55,136 nucleotides of DNA from Macrostomum lignano. Taxonomy: Eukaryota. Position 1 is the stretch's first letter. Each line of letters opens with the position of its first letter. The notes under the pieces are model-generated. The model worked only from the letters and a program-made list of their open reading frames with translations, was not told where the DNA came from and made no database searches. Below are positions 3,318 through 54,504 of the stretch, one piece after another. The translations under genes were made by a program, and so were the position numbers. The stretch covers positions 1-55,136 of the forward strand of contig NIVC01001273.1 in assembly GCA_002269645.1 (NCBI GenBank), read 5' to 3'.

Positions 3318-22097
<18,780 letters not shown>

Positions 22098-23139
22098 TTT
22101 TTTTAGCTCGTATTGAGGGAGCTAGCAACGACAGCTGCATGGTTGGTGCACAAATATATTCGATGAAAGCCGATAAATCCGGAAAGTCTGTTAAAGCTAA
22201 TTTTAAGCAAGTTTTCTCTGCGAGGAGGCTAATATTTTTATTGGATCATAGGCATCACGTTTTCGGGTTTCGAATTTTGCTCCATTATTAAATTTGTTTT
22301 TTTCGACCCATTACTCATGAATCAGTTTGCAAAGTTCTTTGCTGCTAGATTTAGTAGTGGAAGTGATTATTTTTTAAATAAATTACTTTAACGTAGCTAG
22401 CTAAAATTCGGCATAATATTGCTTATATTCAAAAACAAAGCATACAAAGTATTTTCCTTTGATTATTCTGGTTCCGGAATCACGTCATGAAAATCCTTTG
22501 TTGCAAACTGAACTGGTTATAATTGATTAAAGTATGTTTCAACATTTATTTTTACTGCTGAGGTGAGATTCTTTAAAAAATTATGAATAACTACTAAATT
22601 TAAGCAGTCGGGAACCTAGCTGCATAGCAATATTTTGTGTTTTGTTGTTTTGTTTCATGCAGTGCCAGTCCTACTGTAGTTGTTATCTTGCCTAATTAGC
22701 AAAAATCGTTGAGTAAGAAATCTCAGAACAGTAAATTCCGTCAATATTCGCCGAACATCTAATTTTCGGGCTAATTGTTCCGTTTTTTTCACTTATGCTA
22801 AATGCTTTCTGTTCAGTAAAAGTGTGCTTTTAGTGAAATTAACTTGCATATAAAAATAACATATTTGGTATTGTAATTTGCATGATGTCTTCTAATTGTG
22901 CAATAGCCCAGTGGAGCAATTCATATACGCCCCACTATACATTTTATCCTACGCCCCTTCGATGCGCGTCTAGCGCCCTGGCGCACAATTTGTCCAGTCA
23001 GGGCAACTACGTTTACCCTGCGCCCTTTCGACAGTCGAATAAATAATAACGGGATATCCTATTTATTCTACTTATAGTAGGAAGTAAGTAAATACCGGTA
23101 TATGTATTCACGGGCCATACTAATGGATCCCAGCCTGCA

Positions 23140-23213
23140 CCCTGCTGCTCCCCCGCCCTGCTGCTCCCCCGCCCTGCTGCTCCCCCGCCCTGCTGCTCCC
23201 CCGCCCTGCTGCT
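23140..23213. repeat. 16-bp tandem repeat CCCTGCTGCTCCCCCG, ~4.5 copies, in the left subterminal region of the large element
   Basis: Direct reading. Confidence 0.9.
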
Positions 23214-23675
23214 TCAAATGAATTTTTATTTTAATGTTAACTGCAGCCTACAATTTCCTAAGATTCAAAGATAGTCATTATTAGAAAATCAGGTATAATA
23301 TCAGAAATATAAAATGGACAATCGCTTTATTTTCCATACTGGAAACACTGCCACGATTCATGGTTAAGTAATACGTAAATTTGTATTCACCTAATTTGTA
23401 AACGGAATTGTAGTTTTGCGATTTAAATCTGATATCATTTTGATATCTTACAGTTACAGTTACATTTTCTAAAGTGACTGTTCATAATTAATAAAACTGA
23501 AAAGGGCTATGCTCCGTTAATAACATCAAGGAGCTAAGCTAAGAAGGTAGCGCATTTTAAAATGATTATTAAGATTAGCATCAGATTTTAATGTTGAATA
23601 ATGATATAAATAGAACACAGATGCCAAAAACGCATATTTAAATGTTACTATCTACCAATCCATATCAAAGCGAAG

Positions 23676-24204
23676 CAGGGGCGTAGCCAGGAATTTTGAT
23701 TGGGGGGGGCCGTGAGTTAGGGGGCGCCAGCTTCTTATAGGGGGCGCCAGTTTCTTTTAGGGGGGGAGCGCCAGTTTCTTATAGGGGGGGGCGCCAGTTT
23801 CTTTTAGGGGGGCGCCAGTTTCTTATAGGGGGGGCGCCAGTTTCTTATAGGGGGGCGCCAGTTTCTTTTAGGGGGGCGCCAGTTTCTTTTAGGGGGGCGC
23901 CAGTTTCTTTTAGGGGGGCGCCAGTTTCTTATAGGGGAGGCGCCAGTTTCTTTTAGGGGGGGGCGCCAGTTTCTTTTAGAGGGGGGCGCCAGTTTCTTTT
24001 AGAGGGGGAGCGCCAGTTTCTTTTAGAGGGGGGGGCGCCAGTTTCTTTTAGGGGGGGGTGCCAGTTTCTTTTAGAGGGGGGGGGGCGCCAGTTTCTTTTA
24101 GGGGGGGGGCGCCAGTTTCTTTTAGGGGGGGGGGGCGCCAAGGCCAGAGTTGGTGATTGGGGGGGGGCCACGGCCCCCTTGCCCCCCCTCTGACTACGCC
24201 CCTG
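23676..24204. mobile_element. hAT-type MITE with an internal G-rich minisatellite (GGGGGGCGCCAGTTTCTTTTAG)
   Basis: TIRs CAGGGGCGTAG...CTACGCCCCTG; perfect 8-bp TSD AAGCGAAG at 23668-23675 and 24205-24212. Confidence 0.92.
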
Positions 24205-24247
24205 AAGCGAAGTGAAATTAAGGACAAAACATTATCTAACCCTGCTT

Positions 24248-27214
24248 TCACAGTCGAAACAATTTCTGTCTATTTCCTCTTAATTCATCCATCAAATTTT
24301 CTGCATCACTGTCGCTAGAGCTAGTGCAATTCTGGTCATCGTCCGGGACATTGTCGGCCTGCTGGGAATAGGCGAAGCGTTCAATCGACTGACGCTGATT
24401 CTTCTGTGACCCATGCCCACCTGCACCACATGCTGAACGCTTTCTGCTGTCCACCGGTGCTGCAGTTGCGCTGGACGCCTGGTGAGCAGTGGCGTGGATC
24501 CGATGTCGAGTTGGGGTTGCTGGTGTAGTGGCTGTAGCAGATACGGGATGCGATGAAAATGCACCAGCAGCTGGTGTCATTACCGTTGAAGCTGGAGAGA
24601 CATATGCCGCTGCAGCCGCTGTAGATGTGCCCGCTGGGTCTCTGGCCAGGCTTGCTCGGTGACGCCGCTTTTTTAAACGGTCCGTACCGCGGTGCAACAG
24701 GTCTTTGCATATATCATGCACCTTAGCCGGTGTTGGCTTGGCTTCGTCCAAAGCATATAAGCTCGTGATGGCATCTGCGTGTGTTATAGTTTTATAGATA
24801 GATTTAGGAAAAATTCCAACTCTTAAGGTATTAGATAATATTACATTTCTACTAACAGTAGCTGATTTAGGAGTCAGTTCATGTTTAAGTTTATTTTTCA
24901 GATTTACGAAAATTTGCAGCATGAAAATTCTGCGAAGTTATTTAAGAATTATTTGAATGCCGCTTGAGTGGTCTCATAAAGCTCATGATATTGCATAATG
25001 AAATGATTCTCACCTTGAAAATAATTCAGGAGTATTACTTTAAAGCCCAGATGCTGATCAGTCAAAGCTGTGTTAGCTCCTGCCAGACGAGCTCGACTCT
25101 GCATATCTCTTCCGTTGAAGTTGACAGCTGCCTGTAGGTCGGGAGTCAAACAGGAGTCCATCATCGTCCGAACTGTCTCTGACACTGTCGACCGCTTAGC
25201 GAGAAGAAGCAGAGTTTTCTATAATGACAGAAACAACGGATATGGTTGACAAGTAATAGTTGAATCCGTGATTATCTGAGATTGTGTTGTCACTTGTCGT
25301 CAGGGAGAGTGCAAAGAGAATGAAACAGACGAGTCTAACATAGAGGGGTGCAGAAATTGAAAAAAATGAGACAAAAATACGATAATTTAGCTAAATTGAG
25401 GTTGAGATTAAAATGAGGTAATTAATACGCTCGTAGAGGGGTGATATAAATATTGAGGACTAAACTTGAGTCTAAGATTAAAATCTGCTTGAAATATCTG
25501 GCTCAAAACTTACCATTTCTGAAAGCATCTCTGTTGGCTGCAACTCAACGAACTCCACATACGCTTGCCAGCTACTGATGGGCCAGAACTGTGGTGAACG
25601 TGGAGCCGGTGCTGTCGACTGACGGTGCAGGTGCAGCTCTGCGCGAATTGACGCCAGTTCTTCTAGGCAGCGCTTTTGTTGGGCTTCCAATTTACTGTTT
25701 TTCACCATTTGTTCGCGGAGAAGTGACAGCTGCACGAAGAGGATTCCACGAATACTTTCTAAAGGAAAGTCGACCACCGACTGAATCTGCCGCTGAAGCA
25801 CGTGTACCGGACTTGGCCCGAAGCCAAATACTGAAGGCTTTGGGACAGCTGAGATGTCTGCGGCTGCTGCCTCTTCGACCCATGGAGCCATCACTGCAGC
25901 TTCAATTATTGTGATTGCTTCCTCATCCGCTTCCACTTCCGCTGCCGCTTTCGCTTCCGCTGCCGCTTTCGCTTCCGCTGCCGCTTTTGCTTCCGCTGCC
26001 GCTTTTGCTTCCGCTGCCGCTTTCGCTTCCGCTGCCGCTTTTGCTTCCGCTGCCGCTTTCGCTTCCGCTGCCGCTTTTGCTTCCGCTGCCGCTTTTGCTT
26101 CCGCTGCCGCTTTCGCTTCCGCTGCCGCTTTTGCTTCCGCTGCCGCTTTTGCTTCCGCTGCCGCTTTCGCTTCCGCTGCCGCTTTCGCTTCCGCTGCCGC
26201 TTTGCTTCCGCTGCCGCTTTCGCTTCCGCTGCCGCTTTCGCTTCCGCTGCCGCTTTGCTTCCGCTGCCGCTTTCGCTTCCGCTGCCGCTTTTGCTTCCGC
26301 TGCCGCTTTCGCTTCCGCTTGCACTGCAGCGCTTTCCAAAAGCTCCGTCTGATTTCCGCCTGATATCAAGTGTGCAGGCAGCGGGCACAGCGTCGCTAAT
26401 GTCTCAGGCAGTTGTTGATTTGGTAGCTGAAGTTGCGGGCGCCGCTTCTCAGTCGATCGGCCGTCCCAGAAGTGATCTGTGTCGGACGCAGAGCCACTGG
26501 ACAGGTTCTGTGAAAATATTTAATTTGGATTCTGGTCTAAGTACATTCAAAGTGTATAATCTTCTAGTCTAATTTGAATAAGCATAGTATTTCTCCTTCT
26601 TCTTCTCGAATTCATTTATCACTATTCACTGAGACATTCAGAAACACGAAGCTCACCCTTCCTTGATACAACCGACGGGCCTGGCGCTGATCGCTCTTGC
26701 AAAAAACTCGTGGAAGCACGAGAGCTAGAATATCCTTGAGCGTCTTTTTTTTCTTGATTAATTCTCGAGCAAATGCAAGGGCCGGTGAATCCAAAGAGTC
26801 GTCTAACACAACCTAAAATGAAATATAATTAGGTCTATAATGCGTGTATAAATGAGCTCAATTACTGAACTTCAGCGACAGCTAGTAGTTAATGTCTGTA
26901 CGCGCAGCAATTTGGTGAATTTTATTTTTTCAAATCGGCCCTAATCTCAATGGCAGTCGTAATTAAATCAATAATTCGTTGATAACTTAAGCTTGTAACT
27001 ATATAAAGTTATAAACAAAAAAGCTCACCTGGACAATAATTGCAGCAAAGTGCTGCCCTTCGTAGAGTGCCTTGCAGAACCATTTCTCAGTGCTATCTTT
27101 CAAAGCAAGCCACTCTGAGTCTGTCAAGTTTTCCAACTCTTCCGGGAGAATCAGATGCTCTTTGTTTGCCTCAACAACCTGTCTATCAGCTTTGAAAATT
27201 ACAATAAACTTCAT
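24248..27214 (-). CDS. Transposon accessory gene, DUF4806-like, 5 exons, ~690 aa, with an (EAKAAA)x21 repeat; two 1-bp deletions in the repeat shift the frame in this sequence
   Basis: Exons 27214-27029, 26812-26657, 26507-25514, 25218-25014 and 24774-24248, all GT-AG. Exon 3 is 994 nt and becomes 996 (phase 0-0) when the two short repeat units are restored. C-terminal LLLLAKRSTVSETVRTMMDSCLTPDLQAAVNFNGR...GFKVILLNYFQDAI...KVHDICKDLLHRGTDR resembles DUF4806. Confidence 0.75.
25941..26317. repeat. Coding 18-bp minisatellite (GCTGCCGCTTTYGCTTCC) x~21
   Basis: Encodes EAKAAA on the minus strand; 17-bp units at ~26201 and ~26254. Confidence 0.95.
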
Positions 27215-27565
27215 GATAACAAAAATAGTTTTTATATGCTATAGATGGATAGATATTTTATGAATTCGATGAGAATTCTTACATCTAGCTAATTTGATCT
27301 GATGCAAAGTGAAAAAAGCTCATTTGAGAAAATTTAAGCAAGGCTTCAGCTTCGAGAGGTTGGCACAGGGCGATCTCATTGGTTCCGAGCATTGATAAAC
27401 TCAGGAACCAATTTCTATTGGGTCTTACCAAATATCATGTATCTTCAACACATAATCGCATTCGACTTACCATAACCTATCTTAACCTTTCCTACCCATC
27501 TTTTTACCTGATTTACCTACATACAATTAATAATCTACTACAGGTAAAAGCATCTTTCAAACAAA

Positions 27566-29527
27566 ATGTCTTCCAAGAAAAATTTGCAACGACTTGCAAC
27601 AAAGCACTTGCTATCTTCATTTGTTGATAAAGAAAAGAGAGAGCAGGACAAGGTCACCACAGAGGCATCAAGCGGAGCGGAAGAACAACGGATGGACGTC
27701 GATGAAGGTGACCAGGAAGAGTTAAGTAATGTTGACTTTGATGAGATGGAGTGGAATCGTGATGCAGACGACATCTCCGAAGATGACACCGAAGAAGAGG
27801 AGAGAGAGGAAGATAATCGGCCTTTAGAAGTAAAGCTAGAAGCATTGCTTCTTCTATTTCTCTCAACGTACAATATTTCTCGCAGCGCCATGGCTTTCCT
27901 TCTCGCCGGACTTCGAGAAATCGGCATTCCTGCTCCAAAATCTGTTTTCCGACTGGAACGGCTTCTGAAGAAAGAATTTCCTGTAGGGGAATTACTGGCC
28001 ATGGGGGATGGACATTTTAAGTACATCTCAATACTCAATAATCTCCAACTATTAACTCGTCATGGGTTACTGCAACTTGCGCCTGAAAATCTGCAGAAAT
28101 CAAGTGGTTCAACAAAAGTGTACACATTTGAGGCCCACCTGAATAGTGACGGATGTCCTCTTTTCCGTGCGAGTCAATTTGGCTTGTGGCCATTATTAAT
28201 GACAATTCCAAAAGCATTCGCTAAGCCATTTCCGGTGGCAATTTGGGCTGGTATAGGCAAGCCACCATTAAAAGAATATTTGCAAGAATTCTGCGCGGAG
28301 GCGACGATGTTCTTATCTGAACCCGTTAAAATCTCCGATGAGATAAGCATCATGCTCTCCGCTATTTACTTTATATGCGACACCCCTGCGCGCAACTTCC
28401 TAATGTGCACATCCGGTCACACATCTTACGTTGGTTGTCAATACTGTAGAGCCGTGGGTTCACGTGACGACAACAGAGTTGTCTTTTCAACAACCATCGC
28501 CGAGAGTCGTTGTGGACAGATATATCGCGAAGGAGGTGAAAGCAATCAAGCTGAATCTAAAATATTGTCACCGCTGCTGCACTTGCCGAATATGGACTTC
28601 GCGAACTGGTTCCCACTCGATTTTCAGCATGCAATCTGTCTTGGAGCCGTGAGAAAAATTATGAACTTTTATTTTGGAAAAGGAGGCTGCAAACATTCTA
28701 GGAAAACAGTTAAACATCTGTCGGACTACATTGATGAAATTGCCTGCTGGACTCCAAGCAACTTTCAAAGAAGGCCACGGCGCATTGACAAGTGCTTGTC
28801 ATTTCTGAAGGCAACTGAATTCAGACAGTATGTTTTGTATCTGGGTCCTGTACTTTTTAAGAGATACATACCAGAAAAACTTTACAAAAACTTCTTACTT
28901 TTGCACTTTGCCGTGTTCTGCTACTCATCCGAGAAGTACTCTGAACTTTGGTCTCAAGCAAAAAGTTGTATCGAAGTCTTTGTAGAGCAATTGTCCAAAA
29001 TGTTTGGCAAAAAAGCTATCAGCTACAACATTCACGCTCTGCTTCATTTCGACTACTTTGTAAGGAAATTTGGTAATCTGAACAACTTTTCGACTTTTCC
29101 CTTTGAGAACTATCTTGGTTCCATAAAGAGGAAAATTAAAGTCACCAGGCATCCAGCTGCACATGCTGTTGTTCAAGCGCTCAAAGTTCGAAATTTGAAT
29201 TTGAAGGATCATTGTCTCCCGCCCTTAAAGTACAGCACAAAGAAGGGTGACAACTGCTGCTTCGTTGGTTCGCAGTGTGTGCTAATTCAACACGTGACTA
29301 TTAACGGCAAAGTGTCAGGTAGAATTCTGCGGCCTACTGAAAGCCTCTATACGTATCCATTCCCTTCGCTGCTTCTTGGAATTGGTGTATATCACCTGAC
29401 ATCCGAGATCACGACTGGACAACCAAGCCGCAAATGTTGGCTCCTACCCCATGCGACTTCGGCAGCAGCTGAGGGCGAGACAGTGGACTCATTCTATGTA
29501 ATTCCACTAGCAGGGCACGATGAATAG
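27566..29527 (+). CDS. CMC/EnSpm-like DDE transposase, 653 aa, intact and intronless
   Basis: Motifs NSDGCPLF...LWPLL, FICDTPARNFL, GHTSYVGCQYC, FPLDFQHAICLG, KATEFRQYVLYLGP, SYNIHALLH and STFPFENYLG, typical of metazoan EnSpm-like transposases; D/D/E candidates in SDG, CDTPA and FEN; acidic N-terminus. Confidence 0.9.
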   Translation: MSSKKNLQRLATKHLLSSFVDKEKREQDKVTTEASSGAEEQRMDVDEGDQEELSNVDFDEMEWNRDADDISEDDTEEEEREEDNRPLEVKLEALLLLFLSTYNISRSAMAFLLAGLREIGIPAPKSVFRLERLLKKEFPVGELLAMGDGHFKYISILNNLQLLTRHGLLQLAPENLQKSSGSTKVYTFEAHLNSDGCPLFRASQFGLWPLLMTIPKAFAKPFPVAIWAGIGKPPLKEYLQEFCAEATMFLSEPVKISDEISIMLSAIYFICDTPARNFLMCTSGHTSYVGCQYCRAVGSRDDNRVVFSTTIAESRCGQIYREGGESNQAESKILSPLLHLPNMDFANWFPLDFQHAICLGAVRKIMNFYFGKGGCKHSRKTVKHLSDYIDEIACWTPSNFQRRPRRIDKCLSFLKATEFRQYVLYLGPVLFKRYIPEKLYKNFLLLHFAVFCYSSEKYSELWSQAKSCIEVFVEQLSKMFGKKAISYNIHALLHFDYFVRKFGNLNNFSTFPFENYLGSIKRKIKVTRHPAAHAVVQALKVRNLNLKDHCLPPLKYSTKKGDNCCFVGSQCVLIQHVTINGKVSGRILRPTESLYTYPFPSLLLGIGVYHLTSEITTGQPSRKCWLLPHATSAAAEGETVDSFYVIPLAGHDE

Positions 29528-29985
29528 ATTTCTCAGGTAAATATAGTTCATTGGCCTTTCTACTTACTTGTGTCTGTGTTTTATCAATCAATTTAAATAA
29601 ACACCTGTCAGTAAATTAAAAAAGTTCTAAATTATTATTTAATTATTTAATTAGATTCAATTATCGACTTTCATTTCTAAAATAATTATGTTAACAGGAT
29701 CGATAGCGTCATCGACATCTTCCGATTCGTCCTGCGCTGTGTCCCAGAGAAGATGAAGTAAAGCTGTGATTCCATAAAGCAGCTAGAACAGCTGGAATTC
29801 CATAAAGACTGGAGAGGGCTGATAATAAGTAGAGCCATAAGTTTTCATGGAGTCTTGTGAAAGCCTTCACTTCCTATCCTATATACCAAAATGAGTCGTC
29901 TGTATGTACAGTATGTATGAATGTTATTTTTAAAACCCCATCTCGATCATTTGTAGAAGTCTGTGTCACTGTCAGTGTAACACAA

Positions 29986-30098
29986 ACACACACATATATA
30001 TATTATATATATATATATATGTGTGTGTGTATATATATGTACATATATATATATAAAACATATATATATGTGTGTGTGTGTTTGTGTGTATATATATA
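29986..30098. repeat. Compound (CA)/(TA)/(TG) microsatellite
   Basis: Direct reading. Confidence 0.9.
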
Positions 30099-39900: not shown

Positions 39901-39924
39901 ACCGGGCGCCAGTGCACCACTGGG
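30909..39924 (+). repeat. Right-arm macro-unit copy 1 (9016 bp)
   Basis: Starts TATTCATCCTGTG, ends ...CACCACTGGG; ~2.3 kb unique part + satellite array + ~0.4 kb terminus. Confidence 0.95.
33199..39514. repeat. ~184-bp satellite array 1 (~34 monomers, A/B variants)
   Basis: CTAGAGACAC spacing of 180-187 bp. Confidence 0.97.
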
Positions 39925-42900: not shown

Positions 42901-45900
42901 AGCTAGAGACATGATTCTTTCTAGGGAAGATAGGGACTGACACGCTCTAATGATCTGTAGAATCTCATATCTGAGTCTTCTAATACAGCTTGGCAATTGC
43001 TGATTGATTTTCGCGAATTTCACCATTTGAATGCATTGCAATTTTCTGGAATCGCCGTTTTTGAATGAATATCTGGAAGCAGATTAAGCTAGAGACACGA
43101 TTCTTTCTGGGGAAGACAGGGACTGACACGCTCTAATGATCTGTAGAATCTCATATCTGAGTCTTCTAATACAGCTTGGCAATTTGTGATTGATTTTCCT
43201 GGATTTCCCTTATTTAAATACATAGAAATTTTCCGGAATCTCCGCCTTCGAATATCTGGAAAGCAGATTAAGCTAGAGACATGATTCTTTCTAGGGAAGA
43301 TAGGGACTGACACGCTCTAATGATCTGTAGAATCTCATATCTGAGTCTTCTAATACAGCTTGGCAATTGCTGATTGATTTTCGCGAATTTCACATTTGAA
43401 TGCATTGCAATTTTCTGGAATCGCCATTTTTGAATGAATATCTGGAAGCAGATTAAGCTAGAGACACGATTCTTTCTGGGAAGACAGGGACTGACACGCT
43501 CTAATGATCTGTAGAATCTCATATCTGAGTCTTCTAATACAGCTTGGCAATTTGTGATTGATTTTCCTGGATTTCCCTTATTTAAATAGATAGAAATTTT
43601 CCGGAATCTCCGCCTTCGAATATCTGGAAAGCAGATTAAGCTAGAGACACGATTCTTTCTAGGGAAGACAGGGACTGACACGCTCTAATGATCTGTAGAA
43701 TCTCATATCTGAGTCTTCTAATACAGCTTGGCAATTTGTGATTGATTTTCCTGGATTTCCCTTATTTAAATACATAGAAATTTTCCGGAATCTCCGCCTT
43801 CGAATATCTGGAAAGCAGATTAAGCTAGAGACACGATTCTTTCTAGGGAAGACAGGGACTGACACGCTCTAATGATCTGTAGAATCTCATATCTGAGTCT
43901 TCTAATACAGCTTGGCAATTGCTGATTGATTTTCGCGAATTTCACCATTTGAATGCATTGCAATTTTCTGGAATCGCCGTTTTTGAATGAATATCTGGAA
44001 AGCAGATTAAGCTAGAGACACGATTCTTTCTGGAAAGACAGGGACTGACACGCTCTAATGATCTGTAGAATCTCATATCTGAGTCTTCTAATACAGCTTG
44101 GCAATTTGCTGATTGATTTTCCTGGATTTCCCTTATTTAAAACATAGAAATTTTCCGGAATCTCCGCCTTCGAATATCTGGAAAGCAGATTAAGCTAGAG
44201 ACACGATTCTTTCTAGGGAAGACAGGGACTGACACGCTCTAATGATCTGTAGAATCTCATATCTGAGTCTTCTAATACAGCTTGGCAATTGCTGATTGAT
44301 TTTCGCGATTTCACCATTTGAATACATTGCAATTTTCTGGAATCGCCTTGAATGAATATCTGGAAAGCAGATTAAGCTAGAGACACGATTCTTTCTGGGA
44401 AGACAGGGACTGACACGCTCTAATGATCTGTAGAATCTCATATTTGAGTCTTCTAATACAGCTTGGCAATTGCTGATTGATTTTCCTGGATTTCCCTTAT
44501 TTAAATACAGAAATTTTCCGGAATCTCCGCCTTCGAATATCTGGAAAGCAGATTAAGCTAGAGACACGATTCTTTCTAGGGAAGATAGGGACTGACACGC
44601 TCTAATGATCTGTAGAATCTCATATCTGAGTCTTCTAATACAGCTTGGCAATTGCTGATTGATTTTCGCGAATTTCACCATTTGAATGCATTGCAATTTT
44701 CTGGAATCGCCATTTTTGAATGAATATCTGGAAGCAGATTAAGCTAGAGACACGATTCTTTCTAGGGAAGATAGGGACTGACACGCTCTAATGATCTGTA
44801 GAATCTCATATCTGAGTCTTCTAATACAGCTTGGCAATTGTGATTGATTTTCCTGGATTTCCCTTATTTAAATACATAGAAATTTTCCGGAATCTCCGCC
44901 TTCGAATATCTGGAAAGCAGATTAAGCTAGAGACACGATTCTTTCTAGGGAAGACAGGGACTGACACGCTCTAATGATCTGTAGAATCTCATATCTGAGT
45001 CTTCTAATACAGCTTGGCAATTGCTGATTGATTTTCGCGAATTTACCATTTGAATGCATTGCAATTTTCTGGAATCGCCGTTTTTGATGAATATCTGGAA
45101 AGCAGATTAAGCTAGAGACACGATTCTTTCTGGGGAAGACAGGGACTGACACGCTCTAATGATCTGTAGAATCTCATATCTGAGTCTTCTAATACAGCTT
45201 GGCAATTGCTGATTGATTTTCGCGAATTTCACCATTTGAATGCATTGCAATTTTCTGGAATCGCCTTTTGATGAATATCTGGAAAGCAGATTAAGCTAGA
45301 GACACGATTCTTTCTGGGGAAGACAGGGACTGACACGCTCTAATGATCTGTAGAATCTCATATCTGAGTCTTCTAATACAGCTTGGCAATTTGTGATTGA
45401 TTTTCCTGGATTTCCCTTATTTAAATACATAGAAATTTTCCGGAATCTCCGCCTTCGAATATCTGGAAAGCAGATTAAGCTAGAGACACGATTCTTTCTG
45501 GGGAAGACAGGGACTGACACGCTCTAATGATCTGTAGAATCTCATATCTGAGTCTTCTAATACAGCTTGGCAATTTGTGATTGATTTTCGCGAATTTCAC
45601 CATTTGAATGCATTGCAATTTTCTGGAATCGCCATTTTTGAATGAATATCTGGAAAGCAGATTAAGCTAGAGACACGATTCTTTCTGGGGAAGACAGGGA
45701 CTGACACGCTCTAATGATCTGTAGAATCTCATATCTGAGTCTTCTAATACAGCTTGGCAATTGTGATTGATTTTCCTGGATTTCCCTTATTTAAATACAT
45801 AGAAATTTTCCGGAATCTCCGCCTTCGAATATCTGGAAAGCAGATTAAGCTAGAGACACGATTCTTTCTAGGGAAGACAGGGACTGACACGCTCTAATGA

Positions 45901-48778
45901 TCTGTAGAATCTCATATCTGAGTCTTCTAATACAGCTTGGCAATTGCTGATTGATTTTCGCGAATTTCACCATTTGAATGCATTGCAATTTTCTGGAATC
46001 GCCGTTTTTGAATGAATATCTGGAAAGCAGATTAAGCTAGAGACACGATTCTTTCTGGGGAAGACAGGGACTGACACGCTCTAATGATCTGTAGAATCTC
46101 ATATCTGAGTCTTCTAATACAGCTTGGCAATTGCTGATTGATTTTCCTGGATTTCCCATTTAAATACATAGAAATTTTCCGGAATCTCCGCCTTCGAATA
46201 TCTGGAAAGCAGATTAAGCTAGAGACACGATTCTTTCTAGGGAAGACAGGGACTGACACGCTCTAATGATCTGTAGAATCTCATATCTGAGTCTTCTAAT
46301 ACAGCTTGGCAATTGCTGATTGATTTTCGCGAATTTCACCATTTGAATGCATTGCAATTTTCTGGAATCGCCGTTTTTGAATGAATATCTGGAAGCAGAT
46401 TAAGCTAGAGACACGATTCTTTCTGGGGAAGACAGGGACTGACACGCTCTAATGATCTGTAGAATCTCATATCTGAGTCTTCTAATACAGCTTGGCAATT
46501 GCTGATTGATTTTCCTGGATTTCCCTTATTTAAATACAGAAATTTTCCGGAATCTCCGCCTTCGAATATCTGGAAAGCAGATTAAGCTAGAGACATGATT
46601 CTTTCTAGGGAAGATAGGGACTGACACGCTCTAATGATCTGTAGAATCTCATATCTGAGTCTTCTAATACAGCTTGGCAATTGCTGATTGATTTTCGCGA
46701 ATTTCACCATTTGAATGCATTGCAATTTTCTGGAATCGCCATTTTTGAATGAATATCTGGAAGCAGATTAAGCTAGAGACACGATTCTTTCTAGGGAAGA
46801 CAGGGACTGACACGCTCTAATGATCTGTAGAATCTCATATCTGAGTCTTCTAATACAGCTTGGCAATTTGCTGATTGATTTTCCTGGATTTCCCTTATTT
46901 AAATACATAGAAATTTTCCGGAATCTCCGCCTTCGAATATCTGGAAAGCAGATTAAGCTAGAGACACGATTCTTTCTAGGGAAGACAGGGACTGACACGC
47001 TCTAATGATCTGTAGAATCTCATATCTGAGTCTTCTAATACAGCTTGGCAATTGCTGATTGATTTTCGCGAATTTAACCATTTGAATGCATTGCAATTTT
47101 CTGGAATCGCCTTGAATATCTGGAAAGCAGATTAAGCTAGAGACACGATTCTTTCTGGGGAAGACAGGGACTGACACGCTCTAATGATCTGTAGAATCTC
47201 ATATCTGAGTCTTCTAATACAGCTTGGCAATTGCTGATTGATTTTCGCGAATTTCACCATTTGAATGCATTGCAATTTTCTGGAATCGCCGTTTTTGATG
47301 AATATCTGGAAAGCAGATTAAGCTAGAGACACGATTCTTTCTGGGGAAGACAGGGACTGACACGCTCTAATGATCTGTAGAATCTCATATCTGAGTCTTC
47401 TAATACAGCTTGGCAATTTGTGATTGATTTTCCTGGATTTCCCTTATTTAAATACATAGAAATTTTCCGGAATCTCCGCCTTCGAATATCTGGAAAGCAG
47501 ATTAAGCTAGAGACACGATTCTTTCTGGGGAAGATAGGGACTGACACGCTCTAATGATCTGTAGAATCTCATATCTGAGTCTTCTAATACAGCTTGGCAA
47601 TTTGTGATTGATTTTCGCGAATTTCACCATTTGAATGCATTGCAATTTTCTGGAATCGCCATTTTTGAATGAATATCTGGAAAGCAGATTAAGCTAGAGA
47701 CACGATTCTTTCTGGGAAGACAGGGACTGACACGCTCTAATGATCTGTAGAATCTCATATCTGAGTCTTCTAATACAGCTTGGCAATTGTGATTGATTTT
47801 CCTGGATTTCCCTTATTTAAATACATAGAAATTTTCCGGAATCTCGCCTTCGAATATCTGGAAAGCAGATTAAGCTAGAGACACGATTCTTTCTAGGGAA
47901 GATAGGGACTGACACGCTCTAATGATCTGTAGAATCTCATATCTAAGTCTTCTAATACAGCTTGGCAATTTGTGATTGATTTTCCTGGATTTCCCTTATT
48001 TAAATACAGAAATTTTCCGGAATCTCCGCCTTCGAATATCTGGAAAGCAGATTAAGCTAGAGACACGATTCTTTCTAGGGAAGACAGGGACTGACACGCT
48101 CTAATGATCTGTAGAATCTCATATCTGAGTCTTCTAATACAGCTTGGCAATTGCTGATTGATTTTCGCGAATTTAACCATTTGAATGCATTGCAATTTTC
48201 TGGAATCGCCGTTTTTGAGTGGATATCTGGAAAGCAGATTAAGCTAGAGACACGATTCTTTCTGGGGAAGACAGGGACTGACACGCTCTAATGATCTGTA
48301 GAATTTCATATTTGAGTCTACTAATACAGCTTGGCAATTTCTGATTGTTCTTACTGGATTTCCCATTTAAGAATTGATGACGACACTCATAAAGCAGAAA
48401 TTTAAAAAATCATCAAAGTTTCATTTCGTAGTTACCTACTTTCAGTAGCATTTATTGAAAAATTCTTGGCTGAAAGATTCTGAAAAAGCTACTTTTTTGC
48501 CGAGAATGATTTTGATAACATACGAGCGTATTATTTCTTGAAATGAGGTTATAGACTTGAAAATTGTTCAACAAATAAAAATGGAGATCCAGGAACATAA
48601 AATTACTAATAATAGACCCTAGACTTATGAAAAGCGTGTTTTTTTACACAGTGCCCCCCACTCTGCGCCCTCTCGATAGTAAGTAGTACAGTGAAAATTG
48701 TGAAAAACTCGGCGTCGAAATTTCGATGTTCTGGCGCCCAGCGCCATCTGTTGGACCGGGCGCCAGTGCACCACTGGG
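39925..48778 (+). repeat. Right-arm macro-unit copy 2 (8854 bp)
   Basis: Head-to-tail junction CTGGG|TATTCATCC. Confidence 0.95.
42214..48368. repeat. ~184-bp satellite array 2 (~33 monomers)
   Basis: Same monomer. Confidence 0.97.
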
Positions 48779-51700
48779 TATTCATCCTGTGTGAGCATTT
48801 TTGTAAGAATTAGCTGGTAAAATAAACTGAGTCTTGCTTTCAATTCCTTGCAATCAATATACATGTACCTATATTTGAAAATGAGGAACCTAATACTTGT
48901 GTTGCTTTATTATTGTCAGATTATAGTTTTTAGTATATACATGTTAGGACATAGATAACTTTAATGGAGACTCAGATATGAGATTCTAACCGATTATTAG
49001 AGCGTGCCAGTCGGTGTCACCCACAAAAAGAATGTCTCTATCTCAATCAGCTTTCGACTTCGAGATTTTTGAAGGGCGCTTATGCTTTCGCAGTTTTTGT
49101 ACAGATGTTAAGAAACGGCGAATGCAACTGCTTGTTATTCTGAGTCTGTTTGAAATATCTGATACCATTTATTTTTCGTAACTTGTGATACGGTATACAT
49201 GTATATAATTAAGCCAATATATACCAAAGCTCTATACGAAAGAACAAAGCAAACCAAACAAAGATTTCCTAGCTCTGCTTCTCCCCTCTTCCCCTTAAGA
49301 GTGGTGTGCCACGATTTGCATGGATTTGGCCTTAAAAAATCGGGATACCGAACCGAAGCAACTGAAGCAGAAATTCGTTTCTGCGTTGTGCCTCTAACGG
49401 GCGACAGTGATTAGATTCAAACGGATTTGTTATTAGCTCGACTCGTATATAGCCTAAAGTTTATGTCAAGATTTCTAGATTGTATATTGGTATTAATTGA
49501 AACGTATATCGTTTCCCACAGCTGTTTTGGAATCATCAATCAGCTGCTTTGATTTCTCGACTCCGCCCGAATGCATTTGCCGAAAAAACTACTAGCTTAT
49601 GCGACTGTGAACTGGCATCATCGATACACAAAGAGACTGAAACCTCGAGAACGCTAGCTATAAGTCCGTTTTTTGTTCTGCCTTGCTTTCTTGGTTCTGC
49701 TTTGTTGAAGGCCTTCCTAATGTATCAAAACCAAGATTTATATCTGTTTAGCTGCATAGCTAACAAAAATCGTGGAAACCCATTCTATTCATGGTCTGAG
49801 AACCCTGATCATGCATGGACGACTATATATAAGCACCCGGACAGGAAACGGAAAATACATTATTTTTTTCTGTACAACATGGGCAAAGTTCCTTTCTGAG
49901 GAAGAGAGGAGTGGGGCCCTTCTCCGCAACACTCTTTCCCTCACGGCATCCCAAACAAGCAAACGCGTACATATCGCGTTCCAGCCTGAAGCCAAAGTGA
50001 GCAAGTGCATGAAAAGACAGTGACACAGACTGTGGGGTTGTACATTGACAAGTGGTTTGAATAAGGATAACTGTTGCCTTTTCTCCTCGATTGCACTATA
50101 ATTTAGTGACTCTAAAACGTTATTTATCTGCATTTTTTCACCAACTGTTTGCTGATTATTTTAAATTGCCAATCCTGCATAAATAAACAGTGCCGAATTC
50201 TGAAATAGTAGTTATTGGCATTGGCATGTCATCAATAAATGAGATTCTGTCTTGCGCTCAAAACTTATTTTCCATGATTGATTCTTTTGGTGGCTGAGGA
50301 ACGGACTGGCTGGGGGAAGAAAGAATGCCCTCATCTTGTACAGGCGGCAATTTCGCTTTCAGTCCAGTAGAATCTAGGAGTCCATGGATCGTGCCTGGAT
50401 CAAACAAAGAGGCTGGAAAAAAACTTTTTTCTTATCGGGGGAGTATCGGACGAGACAGTAGGAACCTGGTGGCGTGGCAAAAAAGATGTCGGAAGGAGAA
50501 GCTCGAGAGGCTAATAAATTAGATTTTTGCTTCTAAATGGAAGAAGCAAAAGAGATAAAGGGTTCCGAATGCCGTGGGTATCCTCATGCCCATTTCCAAA
50601 CATATACAATATAGACAGGTAAAGTGAAGTAAAAAGCCTCTAGGACCATAAAAATGGTTTATCTCACCGCTCGATCGATACAGAGCGGGTCTCTTTCTTG
50701 GACAGAGCATATGTCCAACAGATACGGCTCTGTTGGACCAATGCTATACTTTTTGCGGCCTCAGTCATACATATCGGGGGGAAGAACCTTCTGTGTTGAT
50801 TTTTCGTCCCGGCAAGCCTCGAGATTTGGTCTGTGACTCGAAGAATAAGAACAAAGAGGTTCGGTTGTCTCCAGAGCGGCCAGATGTGGGTCTGCGATCT
50901 GTGAAGCATCTGCATTTGGCCCCCTGTCTTTAGCAAACTCAGCATTGCTTTTCCTGTGCCTGGTCCCCTGGGTCCAGGAAACTGCTTTCTCCTGGTCAAG
51001 GAAGCTGTATTAGTAGACCCAAACATGAAACTCCACAGATCACTAGAGCGTATCAGTCGGTGTCATCTGTAGAATTTCATATTTGACTCTAGTAAAACAG
51101 CTTGGCAATTGCTGATTGATTATCCTGGATTTCCCGTATTTTAATGCATAGAAAATTTTCCGGAATCGCCGCCTTGGAATATCTAGAAAGCAGATTAAGC
51201 TAGAGACACGATTCTTTCTAGGGAAGATAGGGACTGACACGCTCTAATGATCTGTAGAATCTCATATTTGAGTCTTCTAATACAGCTTGGCAATTGCTGA
51301 TTGATTTTCGCGAATTTCACCATTTGAATGCATTGCAATTTTCTGGAATCGCCGTTTTTGAGTGAATATCTGGAAAGTAGATTAAGCTAGAGACACGATT
51401 CTTTCTGGGGAAGACAGGGACTGACACGCTCTAATGATCTGTAGAATCTCATATCTGAGTCTTCTAATACAGCTTGGCAATTTGTGATTGATTTTCCTGG
51501 ATTTCCCTTATTTAAATACATAGAAATTTTCCGGAATCTCCGCCTTCGAATATCTGGAAAGCAGATTAAGCTAGAGACATGATTCTTTCTAGGGAAGATA
51601 GGGACTGACACGCTCTAATGATCTGTAGAATCTCATATTTGAGTCTTCTAATACAGCTTGGCAATTGCTGATTGATTTTCCTGGATTTCCCTTATTTAAA

Positions 51701-54504
51701 TACATAGAAATTTTCCGGAATCTCCGCCTTCGAATATCTGGAAAGCAGATTAAGCTAGAGACATGATTCTTTCTAGGGAAGATAGGGACTGACACGCTCT
51801 AATGATCTGTAGAATCTCATATCTGAGTCTTCTAATACAGCTTGGCAATTGCTGATTGATTTTCGCGAATTTCACCATTTGAATGCATTGCAATTTTCTG
51901 GAATCGCCGTTTTGAATGAATATCTGGAAGGCAGATTAAGCTAGAGACACGATTCTTTCTGGGGAAGACAGGGACTGACACGCTCTAATGATCTGTAGAA
52001 TCTCATATCTGAGTCTTCTAATAGCTTGGCAATGATTGATTTTCCTGGATTTCCCTTATTTAAATACATAGAAATTTTCCGGAATCTCCGCCTTCGAATA
52101 TCTGGAAAGCAGATTAAGCTAGAGACATGATTCTTTCTAGGGAAGATAGGGACTGACACGCTCTAATGATCTGTAGAATCTCATATCTGAGTCTTCTAAT
52201 ACAGCTTGGCAATTGCTGATTGATTTTCGCGAATTTCACTATTTGAATGCATTGCAATTTTCTGGAATCGCCATTTTTGAATGAATATCTGGAAGGCAGA
52301 TTAAGCTAGAGACACGATTCTTTCTGGGAAGACAGGGACTGACACGCTCTAATGATGATCTGTAGAATCTCATATCTGAGTCTTCTAATACAGCTTGGCA
52401 ATTTGTGATTGATTTTCCTGGATTTCCCTTATTTAAATAGATAGAAATTTTCCGGAATCTCCGCCTTCGAATATCTGGAAAGCAGATTAAGCTAGAGACA
52501 CGATTCTTTCTAGGGAAGACAGGGACTGACACGCTCTAATGATCTGTAGAATCTCATATCTGAGTCTTCTAATACAGCTTGGCAATTTGTGATTGATTTT
52601 CCTGGATTTCCCTTATTTAAATACATAGAAATTTTCCGGAATCTCCGCCTTCGAATATCTGGAAAGCAGATTAAGCTAGAGACACGATTCTTTCTAGGGA
52701 AGACAGGGACTGACACGCTCTAATGATCTGTAGAATCTCATATCTGAGTCTTCTAATACAGCTTAGCAATTGCTGATTGATTTTCGCGAATTTCACCATT
52801 TGAATGCATTGCAATTTTCTGGAATCGCCGTTTTTGAATGAATATCTGGAAAGCAGATTAAGCTAGAGACACGATTCTTTCTGGGGAAGACAGGGACTGA
52901 CACGCTCTAATGATCTGTAGAATCTCATATTTGAGTCTTCTAAACAGCTTGGCAATTTGTGATTGATTTTCCTGGATTTCCCTTATTTAAATACATAGAA
53001 ATTTTCGGAATCTCCGCCTTCGAATATCTGGAAAGCAGATTAAGCTAGAGACACGATTCTTTCTAGGGAAGACAGGGACTGACACGCTCTAATGATCTGT
53101 AGAATCTCATATCTGAGTCTTCTAATACAGCTTGGCAATTGCTGATTGATTTTCGCGAATTTCACCATTTGAATGCATTGCAATTTTCTGGAATCGCCGT
53201 TTTTGAATGAATATCTGGAAGGCAGATTAAGCTAGAGACACGATTCTTTCTGGGGAAGACAGGGACTGACACGCTCTAATGATCTGTAGAATCTCATATC
53301 TGAGTCTTCTAATACAGCTTGGCAATTTGTGATTGATTTTCCTGGATTTCCCTTATTTAAATACAGAAATTTTCCGGAATCTCCGCCTTCGAATATCTGG
53401 AAAGCAGATTAAGCTAGAGACATGATTCTTTCTAGGGAAGATAGGGACTGACACGCTCTAATGATCTGTAGAATCTCATATCTGAGTCTTCTAATACAGC
53501 TTGGCAATTGCTGATTGATTTTCGCGAATTTCACCATTTGAATGCATTGCAATTTTCTGGAATCGCCATTTTTGAATGAATATCTGGAAGGCAGATTAAG
53601 CTAGAGACACGATTCTTTCTAGGGAAGATAGGGACTGACACGCTCTAATGATCTGTAGAATCTCATATCTGAGTCTTCTAATACAGCTTGGCAATTTGTG
53701 ATTGATTTTCCTGGATTTCCCTTATTTAAATACATAGAAATTTTCCGGAATCTCCGCCTTCGAATATCTGGAAAGCAGATTAAGCTAGAGACACGATTCT
53801 TTCTAGGGAAGACAGGGACTGACACGCTCTAATGATCTGTAGAATCTCATATCTGAGTCTTCTAATACAGCTTGGCAATTGCTGATTGATTTTCGCGAAT
53901 TTAACCATTTGAATGCATTGCAATTTTCTGGAATCGCCGTTTTTGAGTGGATATCTGGAAAGCAGATTAAGCTAGAGACACGATTCTTTCTGGGGAAGAC
54001 AGGGACTGACACGCTCTAATGATCTGTAGAATTTCATATTTGAGTCTACTAATACAGCTTGGCAATTTCTGATTGTTCTTACTGATTTCCCATTTAAGAA
54101 TTGATGACGACACTCATAAAGCAGAAATTTAAAAAATCATCAAAGTTTCATTTCGTAGTTACCTACTTTCAGTAGCATTTATTGAAAAATTCTTGGCTGA
54201 AAGATTCTGAAAAAGCTACTTTTTTGCCGAGAATGATTTTGATAACATACGAGCGTATTATTTCTTGAAATGAGGTTATAGACTTGAAAATTGTTCAACA
54301 AATAAAAATGGAGATCCAGGAACATAAAATTACTAATAATAGACCCTAGACTTATGAAAAGCGTGTTTTTTTACACAGTGCCCCCCACTCTGCGCCCTCT
54401 CGATAGTAAGTAGTACAGTGAAAATTGTGAAAAACTCGGCGTCGAAATTTCGATGTTCTGGCGCCCGCGCGATCTGTTGGACCGCCAGCGCCAGTGCCAC
54501 TGGG
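48779..54504 (+). repeat. Right-arm macro-unit copy 3 (5726 bp, shorter array)
   Basis: Same junction; ends CTGGG|AG, then unique sequence. Confidence 0.95.
51065..54095. repeat. ~184-bp satellite array 3 (~16 monomers)
   Basis: Same monomer. Confidence 0.97.

What the first reader, a model, noticed from the sequence alone, without database searches (positions are those of the whole stretch)
22907..54504. One ~31.6-kb two-gene EnSpm/CACTA-like transposon that carries its own satellite DNA
Seen: the right-hand repeat region ends in TGCACCACTGGG, the reverse complement of CCCAGTGGAGCA at 22907 (11/12 match for the internal ends; the outermost end is noisier and keeps the terminal 8 bp). The outer boundaries read caatAG|CCCAG and CTGGG|AGctga, a 2-bp duplication. 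Inside are an intact transposase, a divergent accessory gene and ~15.5 kb of a 184-bp satellite. Established: CMC/EnSpm elements have short TIRs, 2-3 bp TSDs, subterminal repeats and a transposase plus an accessory protein; plant CACTAs are known to carry tandem repeats. Inference: this is a young, possibly active, metazoan element that can amplify and disperse a nucleosome-length satellite. A single-arm form would be ~17 kb, or ~10.7 kb without the array.
Basis: partly seen in the sequence, partly recalled or inferred. Interest (0 to 1): 0.9.

Follow-up and report, generated by a model that had tools for sequence, protein, structure and literature searches.

The report
Transposon with satellite and triplicated arm
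This is a real cut-and-paste DNA transposon in an animal genome: a complete 17-kb two-gene element with a 6.3-kb satellite array inside it, whose 9-kb right arm has been copied twice more in tandem, showing how a transposon can seed larger repeats.

Summary
CCCAGTGG occurs once on the + strand (22907). Its reverse complement occurs only at 39924, 48778 and 54504. AG flanks both outer ends. Three 184-bp arrays total 15,496 bp.

The same CCCAGTGG...CCACTGGG termini bound three related elements elsewhere, two in Macrostomum lignano and one in two metagenome contigs. So the ends are a lineage signature, not chance.

The 653-aa ORF is intact. It carries a D-D-C(2)C-H(3)H-E signature, and its model matches only RAG1 and Transib. 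That places it in the CACTA/Mirage/Chapaev/Transib group, but with non-canonical termini and an accessory protein with no known family.

"One 31.6-kb element" needs refining. There is a complete 17,018-bp element (22907-39924) followed by two tandem copies of its 3' arm (from 30909). Each copy is joined exactly at the right terminus.

Variant phasing fits a transposase-made junction of the end to an internal site, followed by one unequal crossover within the arrays.

The satellite lies inside the element, and inverted partial monomers sit in the unique part. No second copy of this family could be found, so activity and satellite dispersal are untested. The 2-bp duplication is supported in 2 of 5 end pairs.

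Satellites carried by transposons are already known. I rate this a new variant, of moderate interest.

The parts
22905..22906 (.). Left copy of the putative 2-bp target-site duplication (AG)
   Evidence: the left flank reads ...caatAG|CCCAG. It matches 54505-54506.
22907..22918 (+). Left terminal inverted repeat, CCCAGTGGAGCA
   Evidence: it is the only + strand copy in the window, with 0.10 matches expected by chance. Homology to the left end of M. lignano locus L001 begins exactly here.
22919..23140 (+). Left subterminal region with two GCCC(Y)1-3TCGA motifs, at 22953 and 23022
   Evidence: in the whole window this motif occurs only here and once in each right subterminal region, always on the + strand; the region aligns with the L001 left end about 6 standard deviations above shuffled controls.
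23140..23213 (.). 16-bp tandem repeat, 4.6 copies (CCCTGCTGCTCCCCCG), in the left arm
23720..24132 (.). 21-bp tandem repeat, about 18 copies (GGGGGCGCCAGTTTCTTTTAG). It shares the 8-mer GCGCCAGT with each right terminus and is a candidate protein-binding array.
   Evidence: GCGCCAGT occurs 16 times here, once within about 20 nt of each of the three right ends, and nowhere else in the window.
24248..27214 (-). Accessory gene of about 6 exons, transcribed divergently from the transposase. It starts with MKFIVIF at 27214 and stops at 24248.
   Evidence: the exon blocks are conserved with L001 at 36-61% amino-acid identity and have GT/AG borders. The L002 second gene starts with the same MKFIVIF and shares the ..AAVNFNG.. 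block. There is no Pfam family and no database relative.
25917..26320 (-). 18-bp coding repeat inside the accessory gene. Two of its units are 17 nt long, which shifts the reading frame.
   Evidence: A similar repeat sits at L001 7501-7569. The frame shift may be assembly error, because the assembly is noisy for 1-bp indels.
27566..29527 (+). Transposase ORF, 653 aa, uninterrupted
   Evidence: One search gives the ORF; 60% identity to an M. lignano protein and 96% coverage of a 636-aa relative. D195, D272, C291xxC294, H490xxxH494 and E514 are conserved; the AlphaFold2 model (pLDDT 86.5) matches only RAG1 (E about 3e-10) and HzTransib.
30909..39924 (+). 3' arm, unit 1 (9,016 bp): a unique part 30909-33198, array A, and the right end
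   Evidence: this unit recurs at 39925-48778 and 48779-54504; the unique parts are at least 99.7% identical.
31098..31185 (-). Inverted partial satellite monomer (81% identity) in the unique part of the arm
33136..33192 (-). Inverted partial satellite monomer (88% identity) lying 6 bp before the start of the array
   Evidence: D6.
33199..39510 (+). Satellite array A: 34 monomers of about 184 bp plus a 71-bp partial monomer. Two monomer types alternate, giving a 369-bp dimer.
39511..39924 (+). Right subterminal region and the first right terminus (...GCGCCAGTGCACCACTGGG), joined directly to a copy of position 30909
39925..48778 (+). 3' arm, unit 2 (8,854 bp): a unique part, array B (42214-48370, 33 monomers) and the second right terminus
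   Evidence: Its left part matches unit 3 and its right 800 bp match unit 1.
48779..54504 (+). 3' arm, unit 3 (5,726 bp): a unique part, array C (51065-54091, 16 monomers) and the outer right terminus (...GCCAGTGCCACTGGG)
54505..54506 (.). Right copy of the putative 2-bp target-site duplication (AG)
   Evidence: the right flank reads CTGGG|AGctga.

Best explanation
The locus holds one insertion of an autonomous cut-and-paste DNA transposon. It belongs to a flatworm-associated sublineage of the CACTA/Mirage/Chapaev/Transib group.

The element proper is 22907-39924 (17,018 bp). Its features are:
- termini CCCAGTGG...CCACTGGG;
- subterminal repeats;
- a multi-exon accessory gene on the minus strand;
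- an intact 653-aa transposase with a RAG1-like fold;
- a 3' arm holding a 34-monomer, 184-bp satellite that arose from sequence already present in that arm.

Inferred history of the triplication:
1. The exact right terminus became joined to internal position 30909 of a copy of the same element. This could happen by insertion into another copy followed by recombination between the duplicated left parts. It could also happen by a sister-chromatid transposition that used one end. Either route gives a complete element followed by a second 30909-to-end arm.
2. One unequal crossover within the satellite arrays then added a third arm.
3. Array C later lost about 3.3 kb.

The composite, 22907-54504, still lies between the original AG target duplication. 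It probably sits in an intron of a KCNT/Slack-like potassium-channel gene.

Shown directly: the anatomy, the conserved termini, the enzyme class and the variant phasing. Inferred: the order of events, and any present-day mobility.
For: Termini:
- Unique in the window.
- The same 8-bp termini bound L002, which has a 30-bp inverted repeat and CT/CT flanks.
- The identical 6,519-bp element in L003 and L004 loses homology exactly at CCCAGTGG and at CCACTGGG.
- The L001 left end is homologous and lies 4.7 kb upstream of its transposase, as in the window.

Enzyme:
- Conserved D195, D272, C291xxC294, H490xxxH494 and E514. This matches the signature described for this clade in PMC12730594.
- Foldseek returns only RAG1 and HzTransib.
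- Some relatives carry DUF4218 or Transposase_21.

Accessory gene: conserved in L001 and L002.

Satellite is internal:
- It lies between the transposase and a 414-bp non-satellite right end.
- Inverted partial monomers occur at 31098-31185 and 33136-33192.

Triplication:
- Both internal junctions read CTGGG|TATTCATCC, which equals position 30909.
- The three arrays share the same order of monomer types.
- In the unique part, unit 2 equals unit 3 and differs from unit 1. In the last 800 bp, unit 1 equals unit 2 and differs from unit 3. This is the pattern one unequal crossover predicts.
Against: - No second copy of this family and no empty site could be examined. Mobility, and whether the satellite is carried in other copies, are therefore untested.
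- The relatives L001, L002 and L003 have no satellite.
- The 2-bp duplication is absent in L003 (GA/AA), L004 (TA/TT) and L001 (AA/AG, with an uncertain right end). Flank pairing in the short-read metagenome contigs is itself uncertain.
- The accessory reading frame is shifted by two 17-nt units in its 18-bp repeat. This is either real damage or assembly error.
- The outer right end has 10 mismatches in 45 bp, and neither proposed route predicts this.
- The arrays carry further small rearrangements beyond a single crossover.
Confidence: 0.7

Rival explanations
1. The whole 31.6-kb block, with three arms, is the normal transposing unit of the family. On this view the family carries about 15 kb of satellite and moves as one piece.
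For: The outer ends carry the matching AG/AG flanks. Any of the three right ends could in principle pair with the single left end.
Against: The internal right termini are intact and match the left end better than the outer one does, 11/12 against 8 bp. The arms are 99.7-100% identical, with phasing typical of a local unequal crossover. Relatives are 6-8 kb long with a single right end. The triple form therefore looks like a recent rearrangement specific to this locus.
Confidence: 0.12
2. The satellite is host DNA. On this view the transposon landed beside or within a pre-existing array, or two separate elements bracket host satellite, so the satellite is not cargo.
For: No other copy of the family is available to show that the array travels with it. 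Related elements lack it.
Against: The window has only one left terminus, so there are not two elements. Downstream of the transposase, the first right terminus lies beyond the array. Each array is followed by the same 414-bp non-satellite end, which carries the lineage-specific terminus. Inverted monomer fragments lie in the unique part of the element. No satellite lies outside 22907-54504.
Confidence: 0.05
3. The tandem triplication of the arm is an assembly artefact, caused by long reads being stacked wrongly across a satellite.
For: The assembly is noisy for 1-bp indels. Satellite-rich regions are prone to mis-assembly.
Against: The end-to-30909 junction appears twice. The three arrays differ in length and in internal rearrangements. 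The units carry substitutions that phase consistently. The outer end differs from the internal ends. A collapse or expansion artefact would not produce this structured pattern.
Confidence: 0.08

Closest known systems
Plant CACTA/En-Spm elements with internal tandem arrays that seed satellite DNA (for example in Chenopodium; PMC7320549, PMC8978399)
   Same: A cut-and-paste element of the same transposase superfamily, with short terminal inverted repeats, subterminal repeats and a second gene. It has a large size and an internal tandem array that can expand.
   Different: This host is an animal. The termini are CCCAGTGG rather than CACTA, and the duplication is 2 bp rather than 3 bp. The accessory protein is unrelated to TnpA as far as Pfam can tell. 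The satellite does not derive from the transposase domain.
Satellite-like arrays carried by non-autonomous Helentrons in the Pacific oyster (PMC7492417), and the Tetris foldback element of Drosophila virilis (PMC4079207)
   Same: These are animal transposons whose internal tandem repeats of about 150-220 bp behave as dispersed satellite DNA.
   Different: Those carriers are non-autonomous, rolling-circle or foldback elements. This one is an autonomous element with an intact transposase, carries a much longer array (34 monomers), and shows duplication of a whole arm.
Alternative (sister-chromatid or one-ended) transposition of Ac/Ds in maize, which makes tandem direct duplications (from my own knowledge, not checked in a paper here)
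   Same: A junction lies exactly at a transposon terminus, fused to a new site, and a tandem direct duplication begins at that site.
   Different: Here the target lies inside the element itself. The transposase is of a different superfamily (hAT for Ac/Ds). The event is inferred from one locus only.
RAG1 and Transib transposase
   Same: The predicted fold matches only these. The C(2)C and H(3)H motifs and the acidic residues are present. Their spacing resembles RAG1, by residue numbering I recall from my own knowledge. The terminal heptamer CCCAGTG is one base from the recombination-signal heptamer CACAGTG.
   Different: The duplication is 2 bp rather than 5 bp. There is no sequence-level similarity to RAG1. 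No RAG2-like partner is present. Some relatives carry the CACTA-associated domains DUF4218 and Transposase_21.

Membership tests
CMC/CMCT group (CACTA-Mirage-Chapaev, plus Transib/RAG1) | [quoted passage not shown] | tested here: met
   D195, D272, C291xxC294, H490xxxH494 and E514 are invariant or nearly invariant in alignments of 22 and 51 relatives.
CMC/CMCT group | RAG1/Transib-like catalytic-core fold | tested here: met
   The AlphaFold2 model has pLDDT 86.5. The top 38 PDB matches are all RAG1 (E 3e-10 to 2e-7, about 580 aligned columns) or HzTransib. The next match has E 0.34.
CMC/CMCT group | Sequence membership in Transposase_21 (tnp2) or DUF4218 | tested here: inconclusive
   The window protein has no Pfam match at E up to 0.1. 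Of 22 relatives, 9 hit DUF4218 and 1 hits Transposase_21, with best E values of 1e-5 and 7e-6.
CMC/CMCT group | Short target-site duplication of 2-5 bp | tested here: inconclusive
   The window has AG/AG and L002 has CT/CT. L003 has GA/AA and L004 has TA/TT, with doubtful flank pairing. L001 has AA/AG with an uncertain right end. Two or more matches in five pairs has a chance probability of about 0.035.
CMC/CMCT group | Termini 5'-CA...TG-3' (CAC.../CACTA) 'in most cases' (PMC12730594; PMC4079192 for Chapaev) | tested here: not met
   The termini are 5'-CCCAGTGG...CCACTGGG-3' in the window, L001, L002 and L003/L004.
Plant-type CACTA/En-Spm | Second protein of the TnpA type, and a 3-bp duplication | tested here: not met
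   The accessory exons have no Pfam match and no relatives among 5.8 billion proteins. The duplication here is 2 bp.
Plant-type CACTA/En-Spm | Subterminal repeated motifs near both ends | tested here: met
   There are 16-bp and 21-bp arrays in the left arm. GCGCCAGT is shared by the 21-bp array and each right terminus. The GCCC(Y)nTCGA motif occurs only in the subterminal regions.
Chapaev | Invariable CAC...GTG termini and a 3-4-bp duplication (PMC4079192) | tested here: not met
   The termini are CCC...GGG and the duplication is 2 bp.
Mirage | 2-bp duplication (from my own knowledge), and phylogenetic placement with Mirage transposases | not testable with these tools
   A 2-bp duplication is compatible with Mirage. 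No Repbase or Dfam reference sequences were available for a phylogeny.
Transib / RAG-like transposons | 5-bp duplication and a CACAATG/CACAGTG terminal heptamer (from my own knowledge) | tested here: not met
   The duplication is 2 bp. The heptamer CCCAGTG matches CACAGTG at 6 of 7 positions, but the critical CAC is CCC.
Transposon-borne satellite DNA | The tandem array lies inside the boundaries of the element | tested here: met
   Array A lies between the transposase and the first right terminus. Monomer fragments occur in the unique part of the element.
Transposon-borne satellite DNA | The same array is present in several dispersed copies of the element | not testable with these tools
   The source genome is not in any searchable collection. 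There was no exact protein match and no satellite match in JGI metagenomes.

The most novel reading that the evidence does not exclude
The window, the two M. lignano elements and the metagenome element together define a lineage of RAG1-fold transposons that may be undescribed. Its features are CCCAGTG termini resembling the recombination-signal heptamer, a 2-bp duplication and its own accessory protein. In this lineage the transposase itself made the end-to-internal-site junction that turned a transposon arm with its satellite into a 9-kb macro-repeat. That would be a direct, sequence-resolved link between transposition chemistry and the birth of higher-order satellite units.
Probability: 0.2. 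Interest if true: 0.7.

Novelty: new variant of a known kind. Interest (0 to 1): 0.5.

Why it matters
Satellite DNA and transposons are the two largest repeat classes in animal genomes, and how one gives rise to the other is mostly inferred from fragments. This locus shows several stages in nearly undamaged form:
- an apparently complete autonomous element;
- a long satellite that grew from its own 3' arm;
- a junction exactly at the transposon terminus that duplicated the arm;
- a crossover within the satellite that added a third arm.

If other copies in the genome carry the array, the element would be a vehicle that both builds and spreads a satellite.

The lineage itself may also help in tracing how RAG1/Transib-type and CACTA-type transposases relate. 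It combines a RAG1-like fold, CCCAGTG termini, a 2-bp duplication and a private accessory protein.

Tried and rejected
1. Pfam scans of the transposase and of all accessory exons gave no significant family. For the L003 second protein there was only a sub-threshold DUF4806 hint, E 0.049.
2. A search of the large protein database with the concatenated accessory exons found nothing.
3. An exact-protein look-up of the transposase, meant to find the source contig or other copies, found nothing on record.
4. A scan of JGI metagenomes with a 28-mer present in 82 of 83 monomers gave no match.
5. A profile search of PDB sequences found no RAG1 at the sequence level. Only the fold search found it.
6. 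Eighty metagenome loci with transposases 25-37% identical were checked. None has a CCCAGTG...CACTGGG pair, and the two 8-mers are not enriched. A generic search for inverted repeats was mostly noise. One locus, L025, has a CACTA-like terminus, TGCACTAGTAC. The CCCAGTGG terminus is therefore confined to the closer subclade.
7. I tested whether the satellite monomer carries the subterminal motif GCCC(Y)nTCGA. It does not occur in the arrays, so I rejected the idea.
8. The right end of L001 at 13391 shares only ...GTGCACTGGG. The alignment is not significant, so I treat it as uncertain.
9. Helitron-type and retroelement-type explanations were rejected. The element has inverted termini and a DDE, RAG1-fold transposase.
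10. M. lignano as the host was rejected. The flanking KCNT-like exons are only 73% identical to the best M. lignano protein.
Full report
**1. The observation**

- Position 22907 starts with CCCAGTGGAGCA, preceded by caatAG.
- The sequence ...TGCACCACTGGG ends at 39924 and at 48778.
- The sequence ...GTGCCACTGGG ends at 54504 and is followed by AGctga.
- The 8-mer CCCAGTGG occurs once on the + strand of the 55-kb window. Its reverse complement occurs only at those three right ends.
- The 12-mer with up to one mismatch has 3 matches, against 0.10 expected from shuffles.
- Tandem Repeats Finder gives three arrays of a 183-184-bp unit with a 369-bp dimer: 33199-39510, 42214-48370 and 51065-54091. 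Together they are 15,496 bp.

**2. Layout**

A self-comparison shows that the whole 3' arm is repeated, not only the satellite. The segment 30909-39924 (9,016 bp) recurs at 39925-48778 and at 48779-54504.

Each unit has three parts: 2.29 kb of unique sequence, a satellite array, and a 414-bp non-satellite end.

Both internal junctions read ...CCACTGGG|TATTCATCC.... The right-hand side is identical to position 30909, where the original sequence reads ...GCCTTTTC|TATTCATCC....

There are therefore one left terminus and three right termini. The shortest complete element is 22907-39924, or 17,018 bp. Without its array it would be 10,706 bp.

**3. Are the ends real?**

The best test available was comparison with relatives of the transposase.

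- *L001.* The closest protein, at 60% identity, is from Macrostomum lignano. Its locus holds a degenerate related element. CCCAGTGG lies 4.7 kb upstream of that transposase, the same distance as in the window. The first 140 bp align with the window's left end about 6 standard deviations above shuffled controls.
- *L002.* A second M. lignano family, 37% identical, is bounded by CCCAGTGGAAAAGACAACGTTGATCCAACGG and its near-perfect inverse. The element is 6.0 kb long and is flanked by CT on both sides.
- *L003 and L004.* Two metagenome contigs from different samples carry a 100%-identical 6,519-bp element, 34% identical at the protein level. Their homology stops exactly at CCCAGTGG on the left and at CCACTGGG on the right.

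Four families whose transposases are 34-60% identical to the window's thus share the same 8-bp termini. More distant relatives, at 25-37% identity across 80 metagenome loci, do not. One of those has a CACTA-like terminus.

**4. Target-site duplication**

A 2-bp duplication is seen in the window (AG/AG) and in L002 (CT/CT). It is not seen in L003 (GA/AA), in L004 (TA/TT), or in L001 (AA/AG), whose right end is uncertain.

The metagenome contigs are short-read assemblies. Their two flanks may not come from the same insertion, so I treat them as weak evidence against.

Two or more matches out of five pairs has a chance probability of about 0.035. The 2-bp duplication is likely but not established.

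**5. The genes**

*Transposase.* The ORF at 27566-29527 is uninterrupted, 653 aa. It covers 96% of a 636-aa relative.
- It has no Pfam match itself. Of 22 relatives, 9 weakly hit DUF4218 and 1 hits Transposase_21, both domains associated with CACTA elements.
- Alignments of 22 and 51 relatives show conserved D195, D272, C291xxC294, H490xxxH494 and E514.
- By that criterion E514 is the likely third catalytic residue, rather than the equally conserved E418.
- An AlphaFold2 model with mean pLDDT 86.5 and pTM 0.83 matches only RAG1 chains (35 chains, E 3e-10 to 2e-7, about 580 aligned columns) and then HzTransib. The next match has E 0.34.

*Accessory gene.* A gene of about six exons runs on the minus strand from 27214 to 24248, divergent from the transposase.
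- Its exons have GT/AG borders.
- They are conserved at 36-61% amino-acid identity in L001.
- The second gene of L002 starts with the same MKFIVIF and shares the ..AAVNFNG.. block, although it lies downstream of that transposase.
- L003 also has a second ORF with a similar C-terminal block.
- The protein has no Pfam family and no relative in the large protein database.
- Two 17-nt units in its 18-bp coding repeat shift the reading frame. The three otherwise identical arms differ mainly by 1-bp indels, so this may be assembly noise. It could also be real damage.

**6. Subterminal features**

The left arm has a 16-bp array (23140-23213) and a 21-bp array (23720-24132).

The 8-mer GCGCCAGT occurs 16 times in the 21-bp array, once within about 20 nt of each right terminus, and nowhere else in the window.

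The motif GCCC(Y)1-3TCGA occurs only in the subterminal regions: twice at the left and once at each right end. All copies are on the same strand.

These are candidate binding sites. That reading is inference.

**7. The satellite**

- Array A has 34 monomers plus a 71-bp partial monomer. Array B has 33 and array C has 16.
- Two monomer types alternate. The order of types is the same in all three arrays, apart from a one-monomer loss in B and a deletion of about 3.3 kb in C. The arrays are therefore copies of one array.
- Outside the arrays, the monomer matches only two places, both inverted and both inside the unique part of the arm. One is 31098-31185 (81% identity). The other is 33136-33192 (88% identity), which ends 6 bp before the array starts.
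- No satellite lies outside the element.

This supports an origin from the element's own 3' arm. It argues against insertion into a host array.

The relatives L001, L002 and L003 carry no such array.

**8. How the three arms arose (inference)**

A junction exactly at the terminus points to transposase chemistry rather than random breakage. Two routes give a full element followed by a 30909-to-end arm:
- insertion of one copy into another copy at 30908/30909, followed by recombination between the duplicated 8-kb left parts;
- a sister-chromatid transposition in which the right end attacks position 30909 of the sister element.

The variants then phase in a telling way.
- In the unique part, unit 2 equals unit 3 with 0 substitutions, and both differ from unit 1 at four sites (33153-33168).
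- Over the left 5.3 kb the substitution counts are 14 (units 2 and 3), 21 (units 1 and 2) and 29 (units 1 and 3).
- In the last 800 bp, unit 1 equals unit 2 exactly, and unit 3 differs at 10 sites.

A middle unit with the left part of the last unit and the right part of the first unit is what one unequal crossover between arrays of a two-unit precursor predicts.

One feature is not explained. The 10 differences of the outer end are packed into its last 45 bp.

**9. Context**

The window carries exons of a KCNT/Slack-like potassium channel at 7753-8208, 19152-19565 and 20260-20700 on the + strand. The composite starts 2.2 kb after the last of these exons, so it is probably intronic.

The best M. 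lignano match to these exons is only 73% identical. The host is therefore another animal that shares this transposon lineage with Macrostomum.

**10. Comparison with what is known**

Plant CACTA elements with internal arrays that seed satellites are documented (PMC7320549, PMC8978399). Animal transposons carrying satellite-like arrays are also documented: Helentrons in oyster (PMC7492417) and Tetris in Drosophila virilis (PMC4079207). Reviews are PMC9659126 and PMC10048060. The principle is therefore known.

What differs here:
- an autonomous animal element of the CACTA/Transib/RAG1 group;
- non-canonical CCC...GGG termini, whereas Chapaev has invariable CAC...GTG termini and 3-4-bp duplications (PMC4079192);
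- an accessory protein with no known family;
- a long array of 34 monomers;
- a sequence-resolved tandem amplification of the arm.

My literature searches found no report of this lineage, nor of a satellite in Macrostomum elements. That is not proof of absence, and Repbase and Dfam could not be consulted.

**11. Verdict**

It is a real, apparently complete two-gene transposon of this superfamily with an internal satellite.
- The 31.6-kb block is a complete 17-kb element plus two tandem duplicates of its arm. It is not a simple single element.
- Current activity and dispersal of the satellite remain untested.
- Interest is moderate, and the novelty class is a new variant of a known kind.

Noticed in passing
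window 7753-8208, 19152-19565, 20260-20700 (+): These are exons of a KCNT/Slack-like sodium-activated potassium channel, covering the pore (TVGYGD) and the RCK domain. The transposon composite begins 2.2 kb after the last visible exon and is probably intronic. The best M. lignano match is only 73% identical, so the host is not M. lignano.
   Followed up: partly
window 22907-22913 and the three right ends: The terminal heptamer CCCAGTG differs by one base from the V(D)J recombination-signal heptamer CACAGTG. The transposase model matches only RAG1 and Transib structures. This may be coincidence. The critical CAC of the signal is CCC here.
   Followed up: partly
window 54460-54504, compared with 39879-39924 and 48733-48778: The outer right end has 10 mismatches and a few indels packed into its last 45 bp, while the preceding 370 bp or more are identical to the internal ends. 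This is unexplained. Possibilities are a different parental copy, a conversion tract, or repair after an aborted excision.
   Followed up: partly
window 30909-33198, compared with 39925-42213 and 48779-51064: These otherwise identical copies differ mainly by single-base indels, 3-6 per 2.3 kb. That suggests an indel-noisy long-read assembly, so frameshifts in this window should be read with caution.
   Followed up: partly
window about 26166-26236 (-): Two units of the 18-bp coding repeat in the accessory gene are 17 nt long, which shifts the reading frame between the upstream and downstream exons. This is either a real disruption or assembly error.
   Followed up: partly
window 1456-2515, 3507-3982, 10831-11196, 11292-11724, 13266-13393: The host DNA to the left of the element holds several other minisatellite arrays, with periods of 17, 19, 23, 18 and 42 bp. 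It also holds long (GACA)74 at 6004-6300 and (GATA)49 at 20967-21161.
   Followed up: no
L001 (M. lignano NIVC01000586) 5238-13391: This is a degenerate relative of the window element. Its transposase is split by a frameshift near 11229-11245. An RNase H-like ORF (7588-8124), presumably from a retroelement, is inserted in its accessory gene. A (GA)n tract abuts its left end.
   Followed up: partly
L003 350-6868 and L004 55-6573 (ENA metagenome contigs): An identical 6,519-bp two-gene element with CCCAGTGG...CCACTGGG ends sits in two samples with different flanks on both sides, which suggests a recently active family. Its subterminal regions are rich in GCTAGCA-type repeats.
   Followed up: partly
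L025 1840-6189 (JGI metagenome contig): A distant relative, with a transposase 29% identical, has a 21/24 inverted repeat that starts with TGCACTAGTAC. Its terminus is therefore CACTA-like, unlike the CCCAGTGG subclade.
   Followed up: no
window 29980-30098: A palindromic (AT)n/(TG)n microsatellite lies between the transposase stop and the start of the duplicated arm.
   Followed up: no
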